Below, in pieces: positions 1 through 58,485 of a stretch of 64,000 nt of DNA; positions within the stretch are counted from its first letter, which is position 1; each line of letters opens with the position of its first letter. The DNA comes from Selaginella moellendorffii (lineage: Eukaryota > Plantae > Lycopodiophyta). The translations under genes were made by a program, and so were the position numbers. The notes beneath the pieces were generated by a model. That model had not been told where the DNA came from. It made no database searches and saw only the letters and a program-made list of their open reading frames with translations. The stretch covers positions 294,674 through 358,673 of the forward strand of contig NW_003314291.1 in NCBI RefSeq assembly GCF_000143415.4, written 5' to 3'.

Positions 1-724
1 TGTATATATATGTATATATATGTATGTATATGTATGTATATCTATGTATATCTATGTATGTATATGTATGTATGTGTATGTATGTATATGTATGTATGTG
101 TATGTATGTGTATGTATGTATATGTATGTATATGTATGTATGTGCATGTATGTATATGTATGTATATGTATGTATATATATGTATATGTATATATATGTA
201 TGTATGTGTATGTATGTATGTATATGTATATGTATGTATGTATGTGTATATATATGTATGTATGTATATATATATGTATGTATGTATATATATGTATGTA
301 TGTATATATGTATGTATGTATGTATATGTATATATGTATGTATATGTATGTATATGTATGTATATATATGTATATGTATGTATATGTATATATGTATGTA
401 TATATGTATATATATGTATATATGTATGTATATATGTATATATGTATATACATATATACATATATATATATACATATACATATACATATATATATATACA
501 TATATATATATATACATATACATATATATATATATATACATATACATATACATATACATATATATACATATACATATATATGTATATGTATATGTATATA
601 TGTATGTATATATATGTATATGTATATATATATGTATACATACATATACATATATATATACATATATATACATATATATGTATATATATATATATATATG
701 TATATGTATATGTATATATATGTA

Positions 725-786
<62 letters not shown>

Positions 787-808
787 TATGTATGTATATG
801 TATATATG
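1..808. repeat. Compound AT-rich microsatellite (TA)n/(TATG)n/(TACA)n
   Basis: Directly visible. The long Y/I/M/V/C ORFs over it are artefacts of a repeat with no stop codons. Confidence 0.97.
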
Positions 809-1228: not shown

Positions 1229-2886
1229 TTACAGTAATAGGACGACCAGTAACACAACGACCAGTTCTCTGGGATTACTTAGCACGGACGCTCCCAAAGA
1301 TACCGCTGCTGCACAGAAACAAGTTAAATCCTCGAGAATATGTTTCTTTTGACGAACTTACACAAGCGGCAGGGAATGCTGACGAGCTTTCCAGCGACGG
1401 GCTCAGAAGCGTTGAGAGCCGGATTCGCCATCTGGATGTCCGAGATGATCGTCGAGCACTTGACAGCAATCGATGGCAGCGTATCACCGTCCACGGCCTT
1501 GTAGGCAACTCCACAGGGTCCACAGCCAACGTCCTCGTCGTGGCAAGGAATGCTAAGAACGTCTCCAAACGCTACGTCGGCGAGCTTGATGTTGGTGGCT
1601 TCCTGGATACCTTTGACGCTCACGCCACAAACCCTCGCGACCGTGGCTAGATCGACTGCCACCAGAGGCGATACAGTAGATCCGCAGATGGAGCAGCTTC
1701 TCAGTGGAGCGGGAGAGTCCTCGCAGGGGATTGCCAAGCTCTGACCCGGGTAGATCACTCCATTCTCCGGTATGCCGTTTGCATAGGAGACCAAGGCCGG
1801 TGTCACGTTGCACAGCTTGGCTACGTCGAAAACGCTCGAGCTGTTCTTCACGACGATGGTGGTATCACAAAGGTGGCCGCTGCATTTGATCCCTGGAGCT
1901 GTCCGCTGCTTGCATGGGATCGTCAAACGCTGGCCGGGCTGGAGATCGTCCAAGTCAGTGGAAGGATTGCTGGCCTGGAGATCGATGAAGCCCACTCGGC
2001 ATTTTGCTGCGACTTGTCTCCGGCTCTCGTGAAGAATAGTGTAGGAATTCCCGCAAGGGCCACAGCTCGCGGTGGAGTTGCAAGGAATTCGCAGCTTCTG
2101 GCCTTGAATCATGGTGGAGTTGGAGCTGAGATGGAGGCCTGGATTCGCCAGCGAGAGCTCTTGGATCGAAGTTCCACAGTCCCTGGCAACTTGGTTGAGA
2201 GGTTCTCCGTTCGTGGTGGCCGTGTACTCGATCCCACAGGCTCCACAGCCAGTGAGGGCGATGGTGGCGTTGTCTGCCTCGCAAGGGATGCGGATGAGCT
2301 GCCCAGGGTAGACGTTCTCGAAATCGATGTCCCGGTTTGCCATCTCCAGCTCCGCGAGATCCATCCCGCAAGAGTGGGCGATGTCAAAGAGGATGTCCTG
2401 TTCCTTGATCACGTAGGAAGCCCCACAGGTGCCACAGTGCGCCGGATCACTGTTGCGGCAAGGAATTCGTAGCGGCAGGCCCGTGAGATTCGCGGTGGAG
2501 TTGATGCCCGGATTGGCGTCGGCCGCGTCGCGTAGCGAGATCTTGCAATATGCCGCGACCGATTCCAGCGTCTCGCCAATGCTGGCGGTGTAGTTCGTGC
2601 CGCAAGCTCCACAGGTCGCGTTGGCGATCAGCGGCGCCTCAACGATCGCCATCCCGGATGGATCAGGGAGACTGTCGAGGCCATCGCGACCTAGTATTTC
2701 GGGAGCTCTCGTCGTAGTGATCGCAAGAAGAGAAGAACGAGCGATTAGCATACCTGATAAGAATGCGGCATGGCCAGAGCCGCTCCAGATGAAGAGCAGT
2801 AGTCCTAGCAGCAGCAACGACGAAGAACGCGCGTTTCTTGAATCATCGCCATGGAGAATCTGGAAGAACAGCGAAATATCGTCCAT
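1229..2886 (-). CDS. Multi-LysM (7 LysM) extracellular protein with N-terminal hydrophobic segment and predicted spliced hydrophobic GPI-signal-like tail (exons 2886-1362, 1308-1229)
   Basis: Seven repeats of the type YxxxxGxTLxxIAxxCxxxxxxxxxANPxxxxxxxxxGxxLxIPC, most preceded by CxxC. A GTAAG donor at 1361 and TGCAG acceptor at 1309 (53-nt intron) give the in-frame ending SAVSLGASVLSNPRELVVVLLVVLLL*. Confidence 0.85.
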
Positions 2887-34194: not shown

Positions 34195-34785
34195 TTAACA
34201 CTGGAACATTCTCGTTCTAAAGTTTAGGGTGAGCTGCGCGACAAAGGAAGTCGTTGCTACTGGGCTGCCAAGGTTGTAAGCGCTTGCGACCGCTTCCCAG
34301 TCCTTGACGAATCTATCCGCGAGAGGCGTATTGATCTGCCCTTGCTGCTTATACAGTATAAACTCGTACTTGTGCTGCATGAAATCGTGGGGTGCAGGCC
34401 TCATATACTCCTCCAAAATGGTGCCAGCGTCAACCTTTGATCCAGGGATGTTGGCGATCCAATAGTGGACGTACGTGAATTGATCTGCCAATGTAAACAT
34501 CGACTGCGAAGCTCGCCTATCTATCATCACGATGGAGTAAAGCTGTGCAGGATCAACATCTCCGGGGACCATAACGTTGGGATGAATCGCGGTTTGCGGG
34601 CAGGTCAAAAGGGTTCCATCGGCGAAGGTATCCTTTCCTGTGTAAGAAACAGCTATAGAGATCGATTTCTCCACTGCTAGAGATCTTGGCGATGGAGATC
34701 GTGGTGGAGTAGACGCTAACAATCGCGAAGAAGTAGCTCCTGCAAAGAATATAGCCAAGAAAGCAACTACCACAAGCTTCCTCAT
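34195..34785 (-). CDS. Divergent intronless PEBP-family protein with signal peptide, copy 1
   Basis: LYSIVMID, YVHYWIANIPG, Y..P.P, HKYEFILYKQ and YNLGSPVA align with the PEBP core. N-terminal MRKLVVVAFLAIFFAGATSS. TATA box at 34824-34831. Confidence 0.85.
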   Translation of the reverse strand: MRKLVVVAFLAIFFAGATSSRLLASTPPRSPSPRSLAVEKSISIAVSYTGKDTFADGTLLTCPQTAIHPNVMVPGDVDPAQLYSIVMIDRRASQSMFTLADQFTYVHYWIANIPGSKVDAGTILEEYMRPAPHDFMQHKYEFILYKQQGQINTPLADRFVKDWEAVASAYNLGSPVATTSFVAQLTLNFRTRMFQC

Positions 34786-36147: not shown

Positions 36148-39100
36148 TATAAGGGGTTCCAAATGTATAGTAGGGATAGTGGTTGGAATGCATGTCCGAC
36201 CACCTGAGATATTAATTTGGCTCTCACTGGGCTATGTTGCTCCTTGTTCTACGTTCGGCTTGGGTTTAAACCCAAGCTCCATGCTACTCTAGTTGATGGA
36301 GTACCCTCCTCCTTGCATTAGGCCACCAGCATGCAAAATTGTGCCAAACTCCATCTGACACTATTTTGTGTGCAAGTGTTGGATATGGGGAGTTAGTGCT
36401 TGTGGGATTGTACTTGACCCTCGTTTCGTAGCGCAACAGGCTTGGAGTTTAGCTCCAAATTCAGGTGTGCTACATTTGGTATCAGAGAAATTGTTTCAGT
36501 GATTCCTATCCAACTTTTGTCGGATTTTCTGACTCATGTTGCATATGGAGAGACTCTTCTAGGAGATCCAAAGCGACTTATGTAGGATTAATTGGATTGC
36601 ACCATTTGGTAAGAACGTTATATGCATGTTCAGTTACTAATAGAGGCATGCATACAACTAGTGGGATGGTGAAAAGGAATTGTGCTGATGATGCTGAAAC
36701 TTCTAAACGGGTGAATCGAGAGGAGGAAACTCTTGCTAGAGATGTTATGGAAGAGGCTGAGGTTAAGTCAGAAAAGGAAGAGCCAGATTCTGCAGCATTG
36801 CAGCATATGGCTCAGGAAATCAAGATTGAGAATTTGCAAAGGGAAGTTTGCAAATTGAAAAAGAAGAACAAGAAGAGGAAGAAAGAAGTTGAGGTAGTTA
36901 AACCAACTAAACCTAAGAAACCGGACTCCTCTTCAAGTTTTGAGGACGATGAAGTTCTACAACCGCCCCCGATTGCACGAGTTTCAAAGTTTAAGCCTCC
37001 GAAACCACCCAACTTCAGAGGCATGTGGGACTAGCAAGTTTTGGAAGATTGGGTCTACGATATAGAAAACTATTTCATAGCGGCAGACACAGATGATCAT
37101 ACAAAAGTTGCGTATGTGCAATCCTTCCTCACCGATCATGCCAAAACTTGGTGGCACTAGGTGTGTGTTGAAAAAGAGCAGACTAAAAGTTGGACCAAGA
37201 TGTGGTCTTGTATCCGTAAAGAATACTTGCCGAATAATCTTGGTTTGAGACTTCGGCAGTTAAAGCAGCAAGGGGACCTCATGCATTACGTTAATGTGTT
37301 TTCTCAGAAGCACATTATAATTGCAAATATGAGTGATGAAGATGCTTGAAGTTATTTCCTAAAGGGTTTAAGTTCACTTTCTCACAATGAGGTTTTGAAG
37401 TTTAAGCCAAATATGTATCTAGAGTGTAAGGACGCAGCACAGTAAGTTGCATTTAGTCACTCGCTCATAGAACAATATCAACCATATGCTGGTACCTCGG
37501 ATAAGAATAAAAATTCTGGGAATAAACAAAGTGATTGGAAACAGAGGGTGGAAGGCAAGTTCCACCTTGGAGGCTCACAAGCAACAGTTAACAAAGGTGG
37601 TGGTGGTTGGAGGCCACTAGCAACTTCTTCTAGTCTTATGCCCTCTGTTCCTCCTCCTGGTGGGTACAAGCAGCAACAACCTACAAAACCTGCTCCTAGC
37701 GGAACGGGTAGTGTGGGTCATTGTTTCCATTGTGGAGAGTCAGGACATACGTCCTCGGAATGTCCCAACTAGCATAAGACAGGGTCTCTTGTTAATGTCA
37801 TGAGGGAAGACGGTGGTGGTGAAGTTGAAGGGGTTGACGAGTTGGTCAATGCAGATTATAAGGAAGAGGAGGTGAGTTACTTTCGTCAAGTTTTTCTTGC
37901 AGTCAATGCAAACATTGATCTGTTCATATATCTGGTAGGCTTTGTCCGCAAACACCAAATCCAAGTGATGATTGACACAGGAGCTATGCACAATGTGATA
38001 TCCGAAGACTTAGTTAAGTTGTTAGGATTGAATGCTAAGTAGATGTCGCCTATGCACTTCTAGTTTGCAGAAGGTGGGCAAGTAGCCAAAAAATTTTTGA
38101 GTGATGTTCTAATAAAAATATCCAAGTGGAAAGAAAGAGTGGACTTAGTAGTGTTGAAGATATTAGATTTTTAGATGGTGTTTGGTAGGGATTTCTTCAA
38201 CAAATATGTTAAAGGGATTTATAGTGCTGGACAAAGTCATATCACGTTGAAGTCAAAAGGATGTCCTAATGTGTCCTTCCAATTGCAAAAGCACTCCTCA
38301 AAGGATTGGGATGCCAAGTTCATGATTGTGAGAGCCGCTCAAAAAGCAACTAAGAAGGGATTTCGGACCTTTTGGGTTCAAGTGATGGAAGTTGAGGGAG
38401 TTGGTGACTCAATTCGAATTGGTGATGGGGTTGATCCTGTACCAAAGAAGATATTAGAGTTGTTGGCAAGAAATCAGGATATCTTTCTGAAAGATTTGCC
38501 ACCAGAGCTACCTCCTAGCCATGAGGTTGATCATCGGATTGAGGTCATTCCGGGTTCTACACCACCTACAAAGGCTCCATATCGTCTGAACATCAAGGAG
38601 ATGGTTGAACTCAAGAAACAACTCACAGAGATTTTTGACAAAAGTCATATCCGACCAAACAAGTCACCTTATAGAGCGTCAGTACTTTTGGTTATGAAAA
38701 AAAATGGAACTATGAAGATGTGTATCAACTATTGGGCACTCAATAAGATCACAGTTAAAAACAGTTATCCTTTACCTTGCATTGATGACATTTTTTATCA
38801 ACTCTTAAAGGCCAAGTATTTTATGCGACTTGATTTGCGATCCGGGTATCATCAGATACAGGTGGCAGATCAGAATGTGGAGAAGACAGCCTTTAAGACT
38901 TGGTACGGATCTTATGAGTTCCTTGTCATGCCATTTGGGTTATGCAATGCTCAGGCAATGTTCAGCACTATGATGGATAGAATATTCAAGGATTACTTGG
39001 ACACATTTGTTGTCCTATATATCGACAATGTTCTAGTCTTTAATGAAACGTTGGAGGATCATTTGAAACACTTAGAGCTGGTGTTTCAAAAGTTGCGCGA

Positions 39101-42100
39101 ACACAAATTGTATGCTAAGGAAAGTAAATACACTTTTGGACAATTGTGCGTAAACTTTCTTGGACATATAGTTGGTGGTGGCGTAATTGAGGTGGATCCA
39201 AAGAAGGTGGAAGTGGTGAAGTCCTAGGAAGTCCCGACCACTATATTAGATGTTCGTTCCTTTCTCAGTTTGGCGGGATACTATCGCAAGTTTGTCCGCA
39301 ATTTTGCAACAATAGCTCTTCTGTTGACTGAGTTAATGAAGAGTAGTATACCATTTCATTTGACACCAACTTATCAATGTGGTTTTGTACGATTGAAGGA
39401 GATCTTGACTATAGTTCCTATTCTTAGGATCCTAGATCTTGATAAACCCTTCAAAGTGCATTGTGATGCATCTGGCTATGCTATTGGTGCTGTGTTGCAA
39501 CAAGATTGTGACAAAGCAGTTGGTGTTATGCTAAGGTGACATGGTTGCGTTTTATTCCAAGAAATTGGATGAAACTTAACGAAGATGGCCAACACATGAG
39601 AAAGAGATGTTTGCTATAGTGTCGGCCTTGGAACATTGGCGACACTACTTGGGTAGACATACCAAGGTTTATATAGATAGTAACACACTAAGTTACTTTG
39701 CTACACAGCCTAAGCTTACGCCGAAGCAAGCTCATTAGCAAGAGAAGTTTGCTAGATATGATATTGAAATCATATATAAACCTAGTAAAGACAATATTGT
39801 TCTTGATGCATTGAGTCATCAAACTTAGTTCTGGGCAATATCGGCAATTAGTTCGGACTGGTTGGAGGATGTTTGGGTTTTGTATGGAAGTGATCTATTG
39901 GCGAAGGCAATCTTGCACCGTACGGAGTTGTTGAAGCAGAACCCTGGTAGCGAAGTGGCAAAAGTTGCTAATCGAACCAATGTGAAACTTCACTTCTTAG
40001 TTCGGGATGGGCTTATATTCTATAAGCAAGAAAGATTGTATCTTCCCTCTAAGGATCTGCAACAGTTGTTTTTGCGGGAACATCATGATGTTCCGGCAGC
40101 GGGACATGGTGGAAAGCGAAAGACTCTAGCTTCGTTGAAAAAGGGATTTTTTTAGTCTGGTATAGAAGGTGATGTAGCGGATTATGTCCGTTCCTGCCCT
40201 ATATGCCAGTAATGTAAGCACAGAACTAAGAAGTAGGCTGGAAAGTTGCAGTGCATTCTAGCATCGGCATGGCCATTTCAAAGTGGGACACTTGATTTCG
40301 TCACTTGCTTGACGAAGTTTAAGGGTTATGATACTTTGATGGTGGTTGTGGATCGGTTATCGAAAATTGCACACTTCATTCCAACTGTGGAAACAATGAA
40401 TGCGAAACAAGTAGCAAAGCACTTTTTCCATGAAGTAGTGTGGGTTCATGTCTTCCCAAAGAGATAATCTCGAATAGAGATTTGAGGTTTATGGGGAAGT
40501 TTTGGGGTACACTATTCCAATTGTTTGGTACTAAATTGAAGTGTAATATGGCTTATCATCCTCAAACTAATGGGTAGACCGAATGTGTGAATGCTCAAGT
40601 TGAGGATTATCTGCGGTACTATGTTGCAGCAGACCAATGCAACTGGGTTGAGCATTTAGACACAGCGGAAATCTGCTATAACAACATGTTTCACAGCACT
40701 ATTGGCTGTTCTTCATGGGAGATGCTACAAAGGAATGCTTATGGGGTGCCTCAACAGATTGTTGTACCGGAACCAATGTCCGAAGTGTTGGTCTCGGCTA
40801 TTGAGACTTATGTGGAGCAACTACGCCAAGGTTGGTCTAGAGCTACTGAGGTGATGGGCAAAGCTCAGGATAGGCCATCAACCTGTATGACCTGGATCTG
40901 AAGGCTTAGAAAATGAGTAGACAAGTTCACTAGCGAGCCGTCTGTGCCTATGAATGGATGGAACATCTTGTCCATCTCATTTTGCATGGCAAACGGATTC
41001 CCTTTGGACTCAATTTGATCAGGGTCGAGGAATCGGAGGATCATGGGGTTTTTTATCAAAACCAGATCATCCATGTCTGAAGGCAAGTTACACCACAAAG
41101 GTGAACATGAGAAGCCCATGGGAATTCCTCATACTTGTCTCCATACTCTATTTCCCAACCAGACATATGTGTTCCGGATGATAAAGTTATTTAGCTCGAT
41201 GACTTTTGTTGGATCCATTCTGGTTGCCTTTACTAATGAGTGGTGCAGAGGTTTCCATTCGGCCTCGAGATCATTGTTCTTCTTTTGGATTAGAAAAAAG
41301 GTCTTTTTGGAGGTGATTTTGATGCGCGAAGGGTAAGTTGACAAGATGTGTCATAGCCGTCATAAGGCTTTGTTCTCCCTCAAGGGGGATGGCCTCGTAG
41401 CACTTGGTGATATCTCCCGTATAGATCGTGGTGATCCTGTCTGGGAGATTAATTGCGAACTCCTATGTGGATCCACGTCTTTCCTCCAAAGAATTTTGCC
41501 CATGCACAGAAATGATCAGCTATATTCTATACTTGGGTCAGTTTTGGTAGGCTAACTTCGGCACTTCGGTGCAAGGGTCTAATCCATAACTATGGGGATA
41601 ATTATTATAGACTGATCACATGTCCCTGCCTCTCTCTCGATGACTCATTTTTTTGAAAAGGGGCATGGTCATGTAAACAACTTAATCTGCCAGTTTATAA
41701 TAGTTATCTAAATCTTCCTTTGCTCAGGGGAAGTTGGGCCTCTGGCCTTCTCCCTATGTCCCTGCGGGCAAGGATGTATCACTCCTTTGTAAGCTGAGTG
41801 GTACTTGGAGCAGTAAGGGTGGCTAACTCCATTAGTCATTTCCTTGTTAGCAACGGTCGAAGGGTGTCTAGGTCATAACATCTTTGGACGTAAAGGAGAG
41901 GTCGTTCCATAACTCATTTAAGTCGGTGTGTTTCCCATATAGTGTGCTTTTCATTAACTTTCAGAGTTGTTTCCTTAACGGTTTGCTAAACTCGGGTATG
42001 CACCGATGAGGACATCGATCTTCCGCAAATGTGACTTTGGGTATCGAAAGATATTTGTCGGCCAGTCCTTACGGATACTCTTTCCTTACTGCCATAACGG

Positions 42101-43237: not shown

Positions 43238-44027
43238 CTCTTACAAAGAGCGTGGGTCTCCGGCAAGATGCTCGTGTTGATGAAAGAGCTTACTGGCTTA
43301 TGGGAGCTACAAGTATCTCGGCATCCCTCGCGATACCGTTGGTGTATCCCAGACTATTTTCCATCCACAACATACCAAAGGTACTAGTTATCTCTTTGGT
43401 ACTCTGATTAAAGCGCATTTTGCACAGCTGGACGAGTCGAGTCTACCACCAACGCTTCCTCTATCAAGCGAGAACCTGGACCCAGAAGGAATCTTTCTTT
43501 TGGAGACCGGTGAGGACGCTTTTCTATACGCAGGGAAGGCTGTCTCCTCTGAGCTGCTTCATCAACTCTTTGAAGTGCGGTCTGTGAACGAAGTGATTCC
43601 CGGACAGGTACTTCATTCCCTCGCTCGTATGACTCGTAATTTTCTTACTCTTGTTCTCTTTTGCAGTTTTTGTTGCAAGAGTACGATAACGAGCCATCAA
43701 TTTTGCTGAACAAGATGGTGAACGATATCCGTCGCCAACACTGCTCTTACCTGCGGTATGTTTCGATAAAAGAAAACTCTCACTAGTCTTTCTAATGCGG
43801 ATGCTTGCTATTCTAGGTTGCATTTGCTGAAGCGGGGAGATCCTTTAGGTGATCAAACACTCTCATTTTTTTCTTTTTCGAGGCACTCTTGCTCATTCGG
43901 TTTTGTTACAGAGATGATGTTCCACTCCTTCATGATCGAGGACAAGAGCGGGCTGGGCTCGTCTTATGTGGAGTTCCTTGTCTACGTGCACAGGCAAATC
44001 TAGGTAAAAATGCAGTCTGGGAGCTGA
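43238..44027 (+). pseudogene. SEC24: SEC24 (SEC24C/CEF-like) 3' fragment, 5 exons, 5'-truncated
   Basis: LTKSVGLR..AIPLVYPRLFSIH, LPLSSENLDPEGIFLLETGED, LQEYDN..DIRRQHCSYLR, IEDKSGLGSSYVEFLVYVHRQI*. TAG at 44001 replaces the expected Gln, and no upstream exons are visible. Confidence 0.85.
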
Positions 44028-44445
44028 GGTCACTAAAAGCGGAAGAAATTCATTCAATAACATTCCTCATTAGACATGAATCTAAAAAAATTCTCAAGCA
44101 TAGCATTTGCAAGAATTATGTTTTGGCAAACCCAGACGTTGTAAGACATTAATGTTTTTTACTACAATGAAAGGACAAATACCCAAAACGTCTGACTTCG
44201 TTCTTGACACGGTCGAAGATCTACATCCGTATCCGCATGGCTTCACATTTTACTTTTCAACGTCGAAAAAGTCAGCGAGTTATCCGGAACTGAACTATAA
44301 CACGCTCTCCTGCACTATAAATCCTCCCACTCTATACTCAAGCACATCAAAGCTCACACTCAAGCCTCTCCAAGTTTCTCTAGCTTTCTCCAATCTCGTT
44401 CACAGGTCTGGGATCACATCAAAGCAAGAGGCGTTCTTAAAAAAG

Positions 44446-44715
44446 ATGGCGAGCAACAAGATGCTGTTAGCGATGCTTGTGGTGGTGCTCCTGGTGGGAG
44501 TTGACATTGGAGGAATTGCAAGTGCGAGCGCCCAGGGGCAATGCAAGCCGGGGTGGCACTGGGATGGAAATCACTGCGTCCTTTGCCTGCTTGGCTGGTA
44601 CTGGTACAACAATTCTTGCCAACGCTGCCCGATCAACTGGTACTGGTATGACAACTCTTGCCACCGCTGCCAGATGGGCTGGCGCTGGACTGGAAGTTTC
44701 TGCAACGAGAACTGA
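44446..44715 (+). CDS. Small secreted Cys/Trp-repeat peptide (4 x CxxGWxWxxxxCxx), copy A1, intact
   Basis: MASNKMLLAMLVVVLLVGVDIGGIASASA-QGQCKPGWHWDGNHCVLCLLGWYWYNNSCQRCPINWYWYDNSCHRCQMGWRWTGSFCNEN*. TATAAA at 44316, AATAAA at about 44803. Confidence 0.8.
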   Translation: MASNKMLLAMLVVVLLVGVDIGGIASASAQGQCKPGWHWDGNHCVLCLLGWYWYNNSCQRCPINWYWYDNSCHRCQMGWRWTGSFCNEN

Positions 44716-45166
44716 AGTTGCCCATCAAGATCCAAGCTCATGTAACATGTCAATGACAATAATCATTGTAGTTGTGCTGTTTCTTGTGATAACCTTTTGG
44801 TGAATAAAATGTGTGTGCTTTTCTTTCCATGACATCCCATTCTAAGGCTCGGTTTCCTCACCCAGAATCCGCTTGACGAGAGACTTGCTGCCAGTTTCAC
44901 TTTTAGTTTCTAGCAACTCGAGCAGCAAGATTATCGAAATACCGAAGTCTTGCGCTGCTGAGTTTCATACTCGAGACAAGAGATGAGAGAGAAATGTGAA
45001 TCATGCTTCTTAGTTTGGCCACAAGTATGAGTGGACTTTAAGAAATTACGGTTAGTAAAATTTCTTGCAGTTTCTAGCTATTTACTTTTAAAAATATTAT
45101 CATACTTTTTAATGCATTGTCTTCTGATGATCTCACGGGACTTAAATAGAGACTGTTTCATCTGGA

Positions 45167-45179
45167 TTGACCCCGTCAA
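45167..45179. promoter_or_regulatory. Inverted W-box pair TTGACCCCGTCAA (repeated at 46921-46933)
   Basis: TTGAC cores on both strands, about 180-200 bp upstream of both B-type peptide genes. Confidence 0.55.
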
Positions 45180-45368
45180 TCAAGCACAAACACGACATGT
45201 CATGCCGGAGACGCAGTAAAAACCGTGTGCATAGCAGTCTTATTCAGCCTCAAATCCTCCATATAAATTGGTCCCACATTGGCAACACCATAACCCAGCA
45301 AAGCATTTAATCAAGAGAAAGAAGAGATACAAGAAAAGCAATCAGTTTGCATTTCTATTGACGATACA

Positions 45369-45670
45369 ATGGCGAGCAAGTCCCAGCTGATGCTTCTGGC
45401 CATGTTTGTGACAATCCTCCTGGTTGGAGTGGACGTTAAAGCGCAGCAGCCCAGCAGAAATGCAAATCTGGCTGGAACTGGGACGGCCACAAGTGCATCC
45501 AGTGCCCCAAAGGCTGGTACTGGTATAGCAACGATTGCCACCAATGTCTCTCCGGTTGGAAGTGGAGTGGAAGCAAATGCGTGAGTTGCCCGAGCAACTG
45601 GTACTGGTACAACAACAAGTGCCACCATGCCAATTTGGCTGGAAATGGAGCAAGGACCATTACATCCAAG
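45369..45670 (+). pseudogene. Cys/Trp-repeat peptide copy B1 (5 repeats), frameshifted
   Basis: Signal peptide MASKSQLMLLAMFVTILLVGVDV, then out of frame CKSGWNWDGHKCIQCPKGWYWYSNDCHQCLSGWKWSGSKCVSCPSNWYWYNNKCH-/-CQFGWKWSK. Confidence 0.8.
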
Positions 45671-45746
45671 TTGGAATCCAATATTTGATGGATCGTCACA
45701 AAATAATTGTCCCATGTCCATTTGGTTATGAAAGTATATGAAAGAT

Positions 45747-45775
45747 GTGAGAGAGGCTCGAACTCCCGACCTCAG
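45747..45775 (-). pseudogene. tRNA 3'-half remnant (elongator tRNA-Met-like T-arm); more decayed copy at 47500-47522
   Basis: Minus strand CTGAGGTCGGGAGTTCGAGCCTCTCTCAC contains the B-box GTTCGA and resembles the plant tRNA-Met(e) 3' end. No 5' half. Confidence 0.55.
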
Positions 45776-46244
45776 ACTGCCCTGCTTTCTTTCTTTCTAA
45801 CCTTTATTTATCCTGCGTGAATAATTAGCTGCATTCTACGACTAATTTTTACTTCTAGCCAAGATACTCCACGAACACAAAAGGAAGTGTCTATGTCATC
45901 TTTTCGACATTGTTTGAGGTAAACTTCAAGAAAAGTTTACGTGAATTTTCTAGTTCACTTGGTTTCCATCCTTCCCCACAGGATTGTGTTGTCTCAAACA
46001 CGAGGACCAAATCTGGATCAATCAGTACCCAGTCCAAGCCAAGGCCGCATTGTATCACAGCTTCACATTTGACTTTTTAACGTAGATATTGTCAATGAGT
46101 AGCCCTGAACTAGCTTGGAGAAACTTGAAGTGTTGGATGGGAGGATTTACAGTTCTAGGCGGTGACCACGTCTTACAGGATTAGCACTCAAAGTTTCTTA
46201 TCGTTTGCAAGTCGAGACAGAGGCAAGAGGAGAGTTTTAAGAAA

Positions 46245-46518
46245 ATGGCGAGCAACAAGAAGAGCGTGAGGCGGTGCTCCTGGTGGGAGGCATTGCAAAT
46301 GCAAGCGCCCTGACGTGGGAATGCAAGTCGGGGTGGCACTGGGATACGATTAGGAAGAAGTGCGTCTTTGGTACAACAATTCCTGCCACCGATGCCCGGA
46401 GTATTGGTTCTGGTATACCAGTTCTTGCCACCGCTGCTCTGTTGGCACTGGTATGACATCGGTTGCCACCGATGCGAAAATTGGCTGGCGCTGGACTGGA
46501 AGGTTCTGTAAGAACTGA
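46245..46518 (+). pseudogene. Cys/Trp-repeat peptide copy A2, multiple deletions
   Basis: MASNK..GIANASA..ECKSGWHWD..YNNSCHRCPEYWFWYTSSCHRC..GWRWTGRFCKN*, spread across frames. Confidence 0.78.
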
Positions 46519-47103
46519 ATTGCCCATCATTTCCATGCTGAAACTTGTATAATAGCCAATTGTAATAACCTTTTGGTAAATAAACTGTGTCGTCCATTCT
46601 ACGGTAGCGGAAGTCCCATGTCCTCGGCAGGATCGGACGAGATTTCATCCTGCCTTGCTGCTTAAGTTTCATTTTCTAATATTTCATAAAGTTTTTTCGG
46701 AATGTTTAGAAGCTTTTTCTCCACCATATCAATAAGTGCGTTCACTTTTGAAAACATTATCATATTTTTTAATGCATATGAGGCAATTCATATAAAATAG
46801 TGATTGATTGCAACGAGATAGATAGATAGATAAACATTTTTATAGTCACCGGGATATTTTTGATAATTTCACAAGGAAACTCGAGGTTGTTTCATCTGGA
46901 TAAATTCGTACACTTGTTTATTGACCCCGTCAATCAAGCACAAACACGACATATCGTGCCCGAGAAGCAGTAAAAACCGTGTACATAGCAGTGTTGCTTA
47001 GACTCAGCCTCAAATCCTCCATCTAAATTGGCACCATAATACAGCAAAGCAAAGAAGGGATACAAGAAAAGAAATTAGTTTACATTTCTAGATTAACAAT
47101 ACA

Positions 47104-47423
47104 ATGGTGAGCAAGTCCCAGCTGATGCTTCTGCCCATGTTTGTGACAATCCTCCTGGTTGGAGTGGACGTCAGTGGGATCACCAACGCAGCAGCCCAGC
47201 GGCAATGCAAAATCTGGATGGAACTGGGACGGCCATAAGTGCATCCAGTGTCCCAAAGGCTGGTATTGGTATAGCAGCAATTGCCACCGATGCCTCTCCA
47301 GATGGAAGTGGAGTGGAAGCAAATGCGTGAGTTGCCCGAGAAACTGGTACTGGTACAACAACAAGTGCCACCAATGCCAGTTTTGCTGGAAATGGAGCAA
47401 AGGACCACTGCATCAAGAACTGA
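47104..47423 (+). pseudogene. Cys/Trp-repeat peptide copy B2 (5 repeats); two single-A insertions in A-runs, so possibly an intact gene
   Basis: MVSKSQLMLLPMFVTILLVGVDVSGITNAAAQRQCK(+A)SGWNWDGHKCIQCPKGWYWYSSNCHRCLSRWKWSGSKCVSCPRNWYWYNNKCHQCQFCWKWSK(+A)DHCIKN*. Confidence 0.78.
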
Positions 47424-49989
47424 CCAAATTGGAGGCACAAAATGAATTGTGATTTTAAATCTGATTTAAATAAAATCGCAAACTTATTGGGAGAAACATG
47501 GGCTCGAACTCTCTACCTCAGGTAGAATCAAAGGGCTAATGGAGCATCGGTTAAAAAAAGAGGAAGTTATGGTGTGCAATTTATAAATTGTGTGTGGACG
47601 ATCATACGCAAAAACTGACATGTTGTCTTCCAATTCGTCTATAATTTTATGGCCATAATATGCCCTTCAGATGGCCATGGCATGTTTCCATTATCACTCC
47701 ATACATTCATTGGCATAACTTTGACTTGTTAACTTAGGGTTGGTAGCATCCCTGCCCAAGACGGGATTCAACTGGCATGGTAGATGCTAGGAGGCCTACA
47801 TACATCAGTCTATTTCCTGTTTGTAGATCATTTGTTTTTTTCAGTTGCAATGTCGAAACTGTTTGGCCTAAAGTATTTCCCAATGGCGTGTGTGGAACCA
47901 CCTGATGTATGTAGGCTTTTCCTTATCTAATTGGAGAAGTAAGTCTAGTGGAGGATGAAGAACATAGTGTTGCATATGATGGCACTGATGTTTCTGATGA
48001 ATCAAGTGTTGAGAGTGAGACCATTAAGGATAGAGATGTTTTTGAGGTAAGTTAAATTATCCATTGTCATACTAATTGTGTAAGGCTTTGGAAGTCTAAT
48101 TAATTTTGTTATTTGGATGCAACTTAAAATTCTCTAAACCAAAACTACTAGTTACCTTGCAACTTACTTTGGAAGATCAATGCTGTACAAGTACATGAGG
48201 CTTATTGATCCCAATTGGAGGCATGTATATAACATGATGCTATTGTTATGATCCGGCGCAAAAAGACAAAAATCTCATTGCCCTAGACTATGCTACGCCA
48301 CCTCTTGAGGTTCCTCACCACCCAACCACCCCCGAGCTACCTCAAAAGCTCCACTGCGCCGCCGCTCCACTGTGAGCCCTAGGGTAGGTTAAGTCCCTTA
48401 CCCTAACATGCCTTAATATACCCTTGAGCCTCCCTTTGACCGACGTTGACCACGTAGTCAAAGCTGGCGCCTAACAGCTATCAAGAGAGGTATTGAATCT
48501 TGTCCAAGCTAATATTTCTATGAATCGTGCTGGCACAAACTGAGGGATTATCAACTCTCGCTCGGGCTGTAAAACTGCAAGATATCAATTTAGTCAACGC
48601 CAAATATGGCAAACTTTAGCTATACACAAACTATCTAAACTCCAAGACTAGAATTGACTAATGAGTATATTCAAATGACATGCCTTATGCACTATGCCAT
48701 ATAGATTGTGTGTTCAATTTTATACTCTACAAACTATTCTTAGGAACTAATTTTAGTTTTCTTTGTTGTAGTCTATTGCAAGCGTGTGATATACAGTTTT
48801 TATGTCATGCAGTGATCTATGGTGCAACTACAAAGCAAGCACATGCCATTTTAAACACTTACACATGGGTTGTGAGGCACTTCAGTAGGCCAAAACAATT
48901 GAGAAGTAACAATGCCCTTGAACATAATGAGGTTGAGGCTGATATCATGAATTGCTGGGGGGTAGGAACCAAAAGTTTCATACATAAGACATCAACACAA
49001 AATTAAGTATATTGCTTTTGTGTCTTTTGGCTACTCAATTACTCATTACTTTGTTGTAGCATATTGAGCACTTCTAGCATGAACTTTTTGAGTGTATATA
49101 TAGTTTTACAAACACTTTTTTGAGTTGATGGAGGATATCATAATTTTGGATGTCTTTAATCTATGGCATAGATAAAGTTTGCAATGTGTATTTACACCTT
49201 ACCTTACAAAGGATATTTCCCACTGGGTTGTTATATAGAATCTTCAACCTTATTATTGTGGCCAATTCTTTAAGCCATCCCATGTTTCTATTGATCTAGT
49301 CCAACCAATGGAGCATGAACTTGGGTAAAAATTCCTTATGATACTTTCATTTATTCCTATTTTGCGGCATCATTCTAGCCCAAGGTAGAAAAGAGATCTA
49401 AGACATGTCAAGTTCTTTCTTTACTAACATCAACGGGGCTTTATTGTTAGAGGTATTTAAAATTGTCTTGTATATATTGATGAGGTTATTACTTCCTTTT
49501 TGCAGCACCTAGTAAAAGTGAGAAATCAAGCATTTTCAATGCATCAACATGGCCTCAATTTAGATAAGTAGTATCTTTTGTATTTAGATCTATGTGCTAT
49601 GGCAAATGTAGAAGGAGTTCCCTATTGTTATTGACACTTTTTCTTAATGAGGAGAGTCATAGATGCAAAGAACCATATTAATATTGAAGAAAAGAAGAAG
49701 AAAACAAAAGTTATAATATATGTTAATAATTGATTGCAAAGTAGATTTCCAGCATAAAGAAAGCTTATAAGCATACTCCTCAACCATATCAAAGAGTTAC
49801 ACGAAGTGCTATTAACAAAATCTTAGTGACTGGGTATCTTGAGAGTATCAAGCACAAACTTATGATGAACTTAGAAGAGAAATGAATTTTGGTTTCTATT
49901 TTAGAACTTTGGAGGCTTTATAAAATATATGAATTTGATCTATTGCTGCTTTGAAAAATTTTACAATGTACTTTTTATAGAAATTGAGT

Positions 49990-52716: not shown

Positions 52717-53307
52717 ATGAGGAAGCTTGTGGTAGTTGCTTTCTTGGCTATATTCTTTGCAGGAGCTACTTCTTCGCGATTGTTAGCGTCTACTCCACCA
52801 CGATCTCCATTGCCAGGATCTCTAGCAGTGGAGAAATCGATCTCTATAGCTGTTTCTTACACAGGAAAGGATACCTTCGCCGATGGAACCCTTTTGACGT
52901 GCCCGCAAACTGCGATTCATCCCAACGTTATGGTCCCAGGAGATGTTGATCCTGCGCAGCTTTACTCCATCGTGATGATAGATAGGCAAGCTTCGCAGTC
53001 AATGTTTACATTGGCAGATCAATTCACGTACGTCCACTATTGGATCGCCAATATCCCTGGATCAAAGGTTGACGCTGGCACCATTCTGGAGGAGTATATG
53101 AGGCCTGCACCCCACGATTTCATGCTGCACAAGTACGAGTTTATACTGTATAAGCAGCAAGGGCAGATCAATACACCTCTCGCAGATAGGTTCGTCAAGG
53201 ACTGGGAAGCGGTCGCAAGCTCTTACAACCTTGGCAGCCCCGTAGCAACGACTTCCTTTGTTGCGCAGCTCACCCTAAACTTTAGAATGAGAATGTTCCA
53301 ATGTTAA
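52717..53307 (+). CDS. Divergent intronless secreted PEBP-family protein, copy 2
   Basis: 196 aa, about 6 substitutions versus copy 1. TATATAAA at 52671. Confidence 0.85.
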   Translation: MRKLVVVAFLAIFFAGATSSRLLASTPPRSPLPGSLAVEKSISIAVSYTGKDTFADGTLLTCPQTAIHPNVMVPGDVDPAQLYSIVMIDRQASQSMFTLADQFTYVHYWIANIPGSKVDAGTILEEYMRPAPHDFMLHKYEFILYKQQGQINTPLADRFVKDWEAVASSYNLGSPVATTSFVAQLTLNFRMRMFQC

Positions 53308-57894: not shown

Positions 57895-58485
57895 ATGAGG
57901 AAGCTTGTGCTAGCTGCTTTCTTGGCTATATTCTTTGCAGGAGCTACTTCTTCGCGATTGTTAGCGTCTACTCCACCACGATCTCCATCGCCAGGATCTC
58001 TAGCAGTGGAGAAATCGATCTCTATAGCTGTTTCTTACACAGGAAAGGATACCTTCGCCGATGGAACCCTTTTGACGTGCCCGCAAACCGCGATTCATCC
58101 CAACGTTATGGTCCCAGGAGATGTTGATCCTGCGCAGCTTTACTCCATCGTGATGATAGATAGGCGAGCTTCGCGGTCGATGTTTACATTGGCAGATCAA
58201 TTCACGTACGTCCACTATTGGATCGCCAACATCCCTGGATCAAAGGTTGACGCTGGCACCATTTTGGAGGAGTATATGAGGCCTGCACCCCACGACTTCA
58301 TGCAGCACAAGTACGAGTTTATACTGTATAAGCAGCAAGGGCAGATCAATACGCCTCTCGCGGATAGATTCGTCAAGGACTGGGAAGCGGTCGCAAGTGC
58401 TTACAACCTTGGCAGCCCAGTAGCAACGACTTCCTTTGTTGCGCAGCTCACCCTAAACTTTAGAACGAGAATGTTCCAATGTTAA
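57895..58485 (+). CDS. Divergent intronless secreted PEBP-family protein, copy 3
   Basis: 196 aa, about 4 substitutions versus copy 1. TATATAAA at 57849. Confidence 0.85.
   Translation: MRKLVLAAFLAIFFAGATSSRLLASTPPRSPSPGSLAVEKSISIAVSYTGKDTFADGTLLTCPQTAIHPNVMVPGDVDPAQLYSIVMIDRRASRSMFTLADQFTYVHYWIANIPGSKVDAGTILEEYMRPAPHDFMQHKYEFILYKQQGQINTPLADRFVKDWEAVASAYNLGSPVATTSFVAQLTLNFRTRMFQC

What the first reader, a model, noticed from the sequence alone, without database searches (positions are those of the whole stretch)
44446..47423. Tandem cluster of small secreted peptides built from a 14-aa CxxGWxWxxxxC repeat
Seen: four paralogues in A-B-A-B order (~1.75-kb period). Each has a signal peptide and 4-5 strictly spaced C-x2-(G/N)-W-x-W-x4-C-x2 units; A1 is a mature peptide of about 60 aa with 8 Cys and 8 Trp. 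Knowledge: this spacing does not fit defensins (CSab), thionins, LTPs, hevein, snakins or RALFs as I know them. Inference: disulfide-closed hairpins displaying WxW/WYW aromatics, suited to binding glycans (chitin, glucan) or membranes, i.e. a possibly undescribed antimicrobial or lectin-like family evolving by birth and death.
Basis: partly seen in the sequence, partly recalled or inferred. Interest (0 to 1): 0.85.

Follow-up and report, generated by a model that had tools for sequence, protein, structure and literature searches.

The report
Spikemoss secreted cysteine-tryptophan hairpin-repeat genes
This plant DNA carries four side-by-side copies of an unannotated gene for a tiny secreted protein made of repeated cysteine- and tryptophan-rich hairpins; only one copy is intact here, close relatives are switched on, and the protein's job, most likely binding sugars or microbes outside the cell, is untested.

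Summary
The repeat is real. Four paralogues lie in A-B-A-B order, with ATGs at 44446, 45369, 46245 and 47104, inside a duplicated block of about 1.75-1.8 kb. Only A1 (44446-44715) is an intact ORF: 89 aa, a signal peptide plus four C-x3-W-x-W-x4-C-x2 units, 8 Cys and 8 Trp. A2 is a dead, silent pseudogene. B1 is broken. B2 is broken only by two extra A's in A-runs, and reads from other samples lack both.

Stranded RNA-seq shows abundant plus-strand A-type and B-type transcripts. Nearly all of those reads differ from the window at fixed sites, so they come from alleles or close paralogues. Transcription of this exact A1 copy is not shown.

No curated family is matched above threshold. AlphaFold models (pLDDT 81 and 84) show a row of beta-hairpins. 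Weak direct hits and a two-step profile chain point to the ephrin-receptor-like / TNF-receptor-like cysteine repeats, with the Trp pair as a family-specific addition.

The likely role is extracellular binding in defence or at the cell wall; this is inferred, not shown.

The scan found this family before on other DNA of the same genome (s1-358622, followed up; also s1-346883 and s1-363786). Earlier notes name the species Selaginella moellendorffii; I did not verify that.

The parts
44240..46059 (.). Duplicated block 1 (A1 + B1); limits approximate
   Evidence: Direct-repeat families D3-D7, spaced 1733-1820 nt. Pairwise alignments.
46060..47760 (.). Duplicated block 2 (A2 + B2); limits approximate
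   Evidence: Identity to block 1: 93% in the B coding part, 89% upstream of B, 73-78% elsewhere.
44316..44322 (+). TATAAAT box of A1
   Evidence: Read from the sequence. RNA read ends cluster at 44341, about 25 nt downstream (table 6).
44341..44818 (+). Extent of the A-type transcript as laid on this copy (reads come from alleles or close paralogues)
   Evidence: Stranded depth reaches about 240 in X36 and about 24 in X35. Depth is zero in the spacer 44872-45273. Molecule ends lie at 44341 and 44818.
44446..44715 (+). A1 coding sequence: 89 codons plus stop, no intron; first AUG after the inferred start, in the context aaaaagATGG
44446..44532 (+). A1 signal peptide (residues 1-29; basic start MASNK, hydrophobic core, ASA before the predicted cut)
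   Evidence: Read from the translation. No signal-peptide predictor was available.
44542..44709 (+). Four 14-aa units: CKPGWHWDGNHC-VL, CLLGWYWYNNSC-QR, CPINWYWYDNSC-HR, CQMGWRWTGSFC-NE
   Evidence: The AlphaFold model gives one hairpin per unit.
44803..44808 (+). AATAAA signal of A1
   Evidence: Read from the sequence. RNA 3' ends lie at about 44818.
45369..45741 (+). B1, broken copy with five units. Deletion after the signal core puts TAA 45437-45439 ahead of the repeat frame; 1-nt deletion near 45626; last Cys replaced by Tyr.
   Evidence: RNA reads diverge from it at 45434 and continue with an intact signal-peptide end (table 7).
46245..46518 (+). A2, pseudogene. Signal-peptide deletions, TGA at 46311-46313, repeats in three frames, diverged promoter.
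   Evidence: RNA depth is 0 across 46212-46613 in both RNA runs.
47104..47423 (+). B2, five units. In the window it is broken by one extra A in each of two A-runs (47209-47212 and 47399-47401). It also has an extra Cys in unit 5 (CQFCWKW).
   Evidence: The extra A at 47209 is absent from 55 of 67 RNA reads in X35 and from all DNA contigs in X1. The one at 47399 is absent from 39 of 41 RNA reads and from part of the DNA contigs (table 4).

Best explanation
This is a partly decayed tandem array of a gene family that appears restricted to this plant lineage and is not annotated. Each gene has no intron and its own TATA box and AATAAA signal. It encodes a signal peptide followed directly by three to five 14-residue units, C-x3-W-x-W-x4-C-x2.

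Each unit is predicted to fold into a beta-hairpin. The W-x-W sits on the first strand, so both indoles point to the same face. The second Cys sits on the return strand. The units stack into a short disulfide-stapled rod.

The scaffold is most like the C-x2-C-P-x-G-x-[YF] repeats of ephrin-receptor-like / ELAPOR1 / TNF-receptor-like cysteine-rich domains. The invariant Trp pair flanks the position of those repeats' single conserved aromatic residue, so it is a family-specific addition.

The most likely function, which is inferred, is an extracellular binder. A row of Trp pairs on a rigid rod, on a mostly basic protein, would bind wall or microbial polysaccharides (chitin, glucans) or microbial membranes. 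That would mean a defence or wall-associated role.

In this window only A1 is intact. A2 and B1 are dead. B2 is broken only at two A-runs that reads from other plants lack.

Confidence by layer: anatomy and secretion about 0.85; kinship or likeness to the ephrin-receptor-like repeat about 0.6; binding or defence function about 0.35-0.4.
For: Shown:
- Intact A1 ORF with strict 14-aa units.
- Classical signal-peptide layout, by inspection.
- AlphaFold models of A1 (pLDDT 81) and of a B1 piece (pLDDT 84) both give consecutive hairpins with W-x-W in strand 1.
- Structural neighbours are consistently cysteine-rich domains of Eph receptors, class-C GPCRs, ELAPOR1, TNF receptors, thyroglobulin and the Chlamydomonas mastigoneme, but weakly: Foldseek E 0.33 or worse, Z 4.6 or less, atlas TM 0.5-0.6.
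- Pfam TNFR_ELAPOR1_6th E 6e-4, 20 bits.
- Profile chain: window family to metagenomic repeat proteins, E down to 6e-25 and 1.7e-16, hhalign probability 98.3%. Those proteins alone then hit the solved Mst1 ephrin-receptor-like repeats (E 3e-11), ELAPOR1 (6e-5) and thyroglobulin (5e-4).
- A-type and B-type plus-strand RNA is abundant, with zero depth in the spacers.
- B1 versus B2 mature part has dN/dS 0.15 over 54 codons.
- All 8 Cys and 7 of 8 Trp are kept in the expressed A-type relative although 13 codons changed the residue.

Inferred: members with 3, 4 and 5 units exist. This fits one self-contained disulfide per unit.
Against: - No binding or antimicrobial activity has been tested.
- Fold and Pfam matches are all below the usual significance levels.
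- The intermediates in the profile chain were chosen with the window's own profile, and regular Cys spacing inflates scores. Convergence is therefore not excluded.
- Nearly all RNA reads over A1 carry fixed differences from the window (for example 231 of 232 at 44540), and many come from a form with one unit fewer. Expression of this A1 copy is unproven.
- A1 is near neutral (pI 7.7), unlike the basic B copies.
Confidence: 0.5

Rival explanations
1. The copies in this window are relics. The working members of the family lie elsewhere in the genome. A1 is intact only because it is young, and it is not expressed or used.
For: Three of the four copies are broken. A2 has zero RNA depth. Reads over A1 and the B copies differ from the window at fixed sites, so they stem from other alleles or paralogues. 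Only about 3 near-exact reads cover the junction of units 2 and 3 in X35. Earlier notes place further clusters 20 kb away and on other pieces.
Against: A1 keeps a TATA box, a good start context, all Cys and Trp, and an AATAAA signal. The DNA run also lacks the window's alleles, and differs by 2-5% even in spacers. The sequenced plants are therefore probably another genotype, and their reads may come from the allelic A1. The two B2 breaks are absent from those reads.
Confidence: 0.2
2. The proteins are extracellular signalling ligands for receptor kinases, like other plant cysteine-rich peptides (EPF, RALF, LURE), and not binders of glycans or microbes.
For: They are small, secreted and cysteine-rich. 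A-type and B-type RNA levels are reciprocal in the two RNA samples: A about 240 versus 24, B about 4 versus 72. That points to regulated, tissue- or condition-specific expression.
Against: Variable unit number (3-5), many tandem copies, frequent pseudogenes and many residue changes outside Cys and Trp are more typical of defence-type families than of ligand-receptor pairs. There is no match to any ligand family.
Confidence: 0.15
3. Each gene encodes a polyprotein that is cut into 12-residue disulfide-closed beta-hairpin peptides, which then act as antimicrobials.
For: The units are strictly periodic and each could close on itself. Single-hairpin antimicrobial peptides are a known class (review found).
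Against: The linkers are only two residues long and not conserved (VL, QR, HR, IQ, HQ, VS). There are no acidic spacers and no conserved cleavage sites. The models predict one continuous stack.
Confidence: 0.06
4. The C-x2-C ... C-x2-C spacing binds metal, as in zinc ribbons, instead of forming disulfides.
For: The spacing resembles zinc knuckles. There is a weak zf-HC3 hit (E 1.8) and weak hits to the Nup153 zinc finger.
Against: A signal peptide sends the protein into the oxidising secretory pathway. The first and last Cys stand alone. The best structural and profile relatives are disulfide-bonded extracellular repeats.
Confidence: 0.03

Closest known systems
Ephrin-receptor-like (GCC2_GCC3, PF07699) and ELAPOR1 TNF-receptor-like (PF23091) cysteine repeats, as solved in Chlamydomonas Mst1, ELAPOR1 and the thyroglobulin type-2 repeats
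   Same: Both have a C-x2-C-(P)-x-(G/N)-aromatic ... C-x2-C rhythm of about 14-17 residues, one small hairpin per unit, and an extracellular, disulfide-rich rod. Evidence: weak direct Pfam hit, consistent structural neighbours and the two-step profile link.
   Different: The window proteins score below every curated threshold. They are stand-alone proteins of 7-8 kDa, not parts of large receptors or filaments. The period is exactly 14. The invariant aromatics are two Trp that flank the position of the usual single Tyr or Phe (reading of the alignments).
Uncharacterised repeat proteins from metagenomes (P0002, a bacterial protein beside a pilin-like gene; P0023; P0004; the DUF5874 proteins P0009 and P0021)
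   Same: P0002, P0023 and P0004 show a similar 14-residue rhythm; in P0009 the Cys pair is C-x3-C, so its period is about 15. P0002 even contains CPQGHYWYNNQC, against CPSNWYWYNNKC here.
   Different: They are long, from bacteria or unknown hosts, rich in Tyr or His instead of Trp-x-Trp, and of unknown function. The likeness may be convergent.
Hevein / CBM18 chitin-binding domains
   Same: Both are small, secreted and disulfide-rich. Hevein uses a W-x-W pair on a strand to stack on sugar rings (from my own knowledge, not tested here). This is the functional analogy behind the glycan-binding idea.
   Different: There is no Pfam hit even at E 10. The Cys pattern is different and hevein has no tandem 14-aa units.
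Puroindolines and beta-hairpin antimicrobial peptides (tachyplesin type)
   Same: They are Trp-rich, Cys-stabilised, often basic secreted defence peptides that bind membranes (from my own knowledge; the class is reviewed in PMC13001179, found).
   Different: Puroindolines are helical proteins with one Trp-rich loop. The hairpin peptides are single hairpins of 17-25 residues, not stacks of 3-5 units.

Membership tests
Ephrin_rec_like / TNFR_ELAPOR1 cysteine-repeat families (Pfam) | Score above the curated Pfam threshold | tested here: not met
   TNFR_ELAPOR1_6th scores 20 bits against a cutoff of 33.2 (E 6e-4). Ephrin_rec_like scores 8.9 bits against 23.1.
Ephrin_rec_like / TNFR_ELAPOR1 cysteine-repeat families (Pfam) | Shared fold with solved members | tested here: inconclusive
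   The top neighbours are all of this kind, but weakly so: Foldseek E 0.33 or worse, Z 4.6 or less, atlas TM 0.5-0.6.
Ephrin_rec_like / TNFR_ELAPOR1 cysteine-repeat families (Pfam) | Profile-level sequence link to solved members | tested here: inconclusive
   A window-only profile finds no solved chain below E 0.045. Through metagenomic intermediates the link is strong, but the intermediates were chosen with the window's profile.
Hevein / CBM18 | Match to the Chitin_bind_1 profile and the 8-Cys hevein pattern | tested here: not met
   No hit at E up to 10. The Cys spacing differs on inspection.
Plant defensin, thionin, snakin, LTP, RALF, Bowman-Birk inhibitor | Match to the family profile | tested here: not met
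   None is listed among the Pfam hits at E up to 10.
Secreted protein | N-terminal signal peptide with a small-x-small cleavage site | tested here: met
   By inspection only: MASNK, a hydrophobic run of 13 residues, then ASA before QGQ. No predictor was run.
Burpitide or other plant RiPP precursor | BURP domain, or recognisable core peptides with processing sites | tested here: not met
   No BURP hit. The linkers are two variable residues.

The most novel reading that the evidence does not exclude
Stand-alone rods of three to five disulfide-closed hairpins, each showing a Trp-x-Trp pair, are a previously undescribed class of plant carbohydrate-binding or antimicrobial protein. The class would be confined to spikemosses and derived from the ephrin-receptor-like repeat by adding a tryptophan ladder.
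Probability: 0.3. Interest if true: 0.65.

Novelty: new variant of a known kind. Interest (0 to 1): 0.45.

Why it matters
Lineage-specific secreted cysteine-rich proteins are a main source of plant defence and signalling molecules, and those of lycophytes are barely explored. This family is missed by annotation, is expressed, and varies in unit number. It joins a known extracellular scaffold to an unusual tryptophan ladder. If it binds chitin, glucans or membranes, it would be a compact new binding module. It would also show how a receptor-type repeat can be turned into a free-standing effector. This particular locus adds a view of turnover in the family: one intact copy, one possibly intact copy and two dead ones.

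Tried and rejected
- Word-index protein search with A1: no scoring hit.
- ESM Atlas feature search: no usable hit.
- PDB sequence search with a window-only profile: nothing below E 0.045, and the top rows look like chance.
- Exhaustive profile search: no short plant-like orthologue among 58 hits, so no conservation test across species was possible by that route.
- Literature: three searches and two papers read gave no description of the family. The known Selaginella peptides named there (Bowman-Birk inhibitors, burpitides, thionins) are different.
- Read laying was meant to prove A1 transcription. It showed family transcription instead, because the reads carry fixed differences from the window.
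- A1 versus B dN/dS: synonymous sites are saturated, so there is no estimate.
- The idea that the B frameshifts hide introns was rejected: the shifts are of 1 nt or 10-11 nt.
- Pfam on three short exon pieces of the upstream gene gave nothing. My guess that it is Sec24-like remains untested.
- I did not verify the species name.
Full report
**What is there**

The window is plant DNA. Earlier notes of this scan call the genome the spikemoss Selaginella moellendorffii; I did not check that.

Between 44240 and about 47760 a block of roughly 1.75-1.8 kb is duplicated. Each block holds an A gene and a B gene, all on the plus strand. The ATGs lie at 44446 (A1), 45369 (B1), 46245 (A2) and 47104 (B2). 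A six-frame search for C-x3-[WFY]-x-[WFY]-x4-C found 12 units, all in this cluster, and one spurious match in the rest of the 64 kb. The repeat is therefore real and far beyond chance.

**State of the four copies**

- **A1 (44446-44715)** is an intact 89-codon ORF without an intron. It has a signal peptide (MASNK, a hydrophobic core, ASA before the predicted cut). Then come CKPGWHWDGNHC-VL-CLLGWYWYNNSC-QR-CPINWYWYDNSC-HR-CQMGWRWTGSFC-NEN. That is 60 mature residues with 8 Cys and 8 Trp, pI 7.7. It has a TATAAAT box at 44316-44322, no upstream AUG after the inferred transcript start, the start context aaaaagATGG, and AATAAA at 44803-44808.
- **A2** has lost parts of its signal peptide. It has a TGA at 46311-46313, and its five former units are spread over three frames.
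- **B1** has a deletion of about 10-11 nt behind the signal core. This places a TAA (45437-45439) ahead of the repeat frame. It also has a 1-nt deletion near 45626 and a Tyr in place of the last Cys.
- **B2** differs from an open gene by one extra A in each of two A-runs (47209-47212 and 47399-47401). It also carries an odd extra Cys in unit 5.

The B copies have five units that alternate between two types: C-x-S-G-W-[NK]-W-x-G-x-K-C and C-P-x-[GN]-W-Y-W-Y-x-N-x-C. The deeper period is therefore 28 residues. The B mature parts are basic (pI 8.9 and 9.3).

**Reads**

Two stranded RNA-seq runs of the same species label give plus-strand depth over A1, from about 44341 to 44818. Depth is up to about 240 in X36 and about 24 in X35. 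Over B2, X35 reaches 72 and X36 about 4; B1 is lower. Depth is zero in the spacers and zero over A2. A spliced 63-nt intron in the upstream gene shows that this is RNA.

Nearly every read over A1 differs from the window at fixed sites, for example 231 of 232 at 44540 and 400 of 400 at 44469. The DNA run X1 also lacks the window's letters there, and it differs from the window by 2-5% even in spacers. The sequenced plants are therefore probably another genotype or haplotype. The reads come from the allelic gene or from close paralogues.

Many reads join 44567 to 44635 with 25 other letters between, a net loss of 42 nt. An expressed A-type gene therefore has three units, not four. Only about three reads in X35 cover the junction of units 2 and 3 almost exactly. 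So the family is clearly transcribed, but transcription of this A1 copy is not shown.

Both B2 frameshifts are absent from most RNA reads (55 of 67 and 39 of 41 in X35). They are also absent from all or part of the DNA contigs. An open B2-type gene therefore exists and is expressed. The window's breaks are either private mutations or homopolymer errors of the assembly. Reads leave B1 at 45434 and continue with an intact signal-peptide end, so B1's deletion is not in the expressed genes.

Contigs of a run labelled as a second organism (X26) carry the same A-type and B-type sequences.

**Constraint**

B1 versus B2 over 54 mature codons gives dN/dS 0.15, or 0.32 without the Cys and Trp codons. 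The counts are small: 5.5 synonymous and 5.5 non-synonymous changes.

The differences between A1 and the expressed A-type relative change the residue in 13 codons and are silent in 4. All 8 Cys and 7 of 8 Trp are kept. Six of the changes go to Lys or Arg. That list mixes reads from more than one gene, so it is only indicative. The pattern is a fixed Cys/Trp frame with free change elsewhere.

**What it resembles**

- Pfam gives nothing above threshold. The best hit is TNFR_ELAPOR1_6th at E 6e-4 and 20 bits, against a cutoff of 33.2.
- The word-index search, the Atlas feature search and a window-only profile against solved chains gave nothing usable.
- The exhaustive profile search of 1.84 billion representatives gave 58 hits, none a short plant-like protein. 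The best hits are long repeat proteins:
  - a Giardia-VSP-type protein;
  - a bacterial protein beside a pilin-like gene, with C-x2-C-P-x-G-x-H-Y-Y-N-x-R units including CPQGHYWYNNQC;
  - DUF5874 proteins;
  - small proteins with weak Ephrin_rec_like, TNFR_ELAPOR1, NCD3G and CBM_14 hits.
- AlphaFold models of mature A1 (pLDDT 81) and of a B1 piece (pLDDT 84) both show consecutive hairpins. Strand 1 is W-x-W(-Y), followed by a tight turn (NN, DN, DG, SG). Strand 2 carries the second Cys.
- Their neighbours in solved and predicted structures are uniformly cysteine-rich domains of Eph receptors, class-C GPCRs, ELAPOR1, TNF receptors, thyroglobulin and the Chlamydomonas mastigoneme. All are weak: E 0.33 or worse, Z 4.6 or less, TM 0.5-0.6.
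- A two-step chain is stronger. The window profile matches an alignment of eight repeat segments from six of the hits at hhalign probability 98.3%. That alignment, without any window sequence, hits the solved Mst1 ephrin-receptor-like repeats at E 3e-11, ELAPOR1 at 6e-5 and thyroglobulin at 5e-4 (with window sequences included).

The intermediates were picked with the window's own profile, and regular Cys spacing inflates such scores. I therefore rate kinship at about 0.6 and do not file the family as a member.

In those alignments the usual conserved Tyr or Phe (G-x-Y) falls between the two Trp. The Trp pair therefore looks like a family-specific addition on alternate strand positions, which means on one face.

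**How it most likely works**

Shown: a secretion signal by inspection, strict units, and a predicted hairpin stack.

Inferred:
- One disulfide closes each unit. This is the only pairing that stays regular in members with 3, 4 and 5 units.
- The Trp pairs line one face of a rigid rod.
- The rod binds wall or microbial polysaccharides or membranes, and the basic paralogues favour anionic surfaces.

The reciprocal A and B levels in the two RNA samples show that the subfamilies are regulated differently. The nature of the samples is hidden from me.

Rivals are a signalling ligand, a polyprotein for single-hairpin peptides, metal binding, and the plain possibility that this locus holds only relics.

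**Novelty**

I found no description in the searched literature. The scan itself found the family before on other DNA of this genome. One cluster was followed up and judged transcribed, unannotated, basic and five-unit (s1-358622). Two further first-reader notes exist (s1-346883, 20 kb beyond this window, and s1-363786).

This report adds four things:
- the state of each copy at this locus;
- the read evidence on the B2 breaks;
- the three-unit expressed form;
- the profile link to ephrin-receptor-like repeats.

I class it as a new variant of a known kind, the secreted cysteine-repeat proteins, and of moderate interest.

Noticed in passing
window 43816-44134 (+): A strongly expressed, spliced gene ends just upstream of A1. 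Its 63-nt GT..AG intron (43847-43909) is removed in RNA reads and in a contig of the second organism. The stop is at 44001-44003 and the transcript ends at about 44066-44134. Its C-terminal peptide reminded me of Sec24, but Pfam on the short exon pieces gave nothing.
   Followed up: partly
window 44336-44737 and 47016-47551: A-type RNA is about ten times higher in run X36 than in X35. B-type RNA is about ten to twenty times higher in X35 than in X36. The two subfamilies are therefore regulated in opposite ways. The sample types are unknown.
   Followed up: no
window 34198-34785 (-), 52717-53307 (+), 57895-58485 (+): Three 196-aa intronless ORFs with weak PEBP (PBP) domain hits (E about 1e-5) lie on both sides of the cluster.
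   Followed up: partly
window 1327-2886 (-): A 520-aa single-exon ORF with a LysM domain (E 6e-31), a domain that binds chitin or peptidoglycan, lies 42 kb from the cluster.
   Followed up: no
window 38175-39227 (+): A reverse-transcriptase ORF of a retrotransposon (RVT_1, E 9e-29) lies a few kb upstream of the cluster.
   Followed up: no
window 1-807: A TGTATATATA microsatellite of about 82 copies explains the long overlapping ORFs in all frames at the start of the window.
   Followed up: yes
L001 3001-5187: A bacterial 728-aa protein (P0002) on a 1.83-Mb metagenomic contig lies beside a pilin-like (N_methyl) gene. It ends in about fifteen 14-residue C-x2-C-P-x-G-x-H-Y-Y-N-x-R units and matches no Pfam family.
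   Followed up: partly
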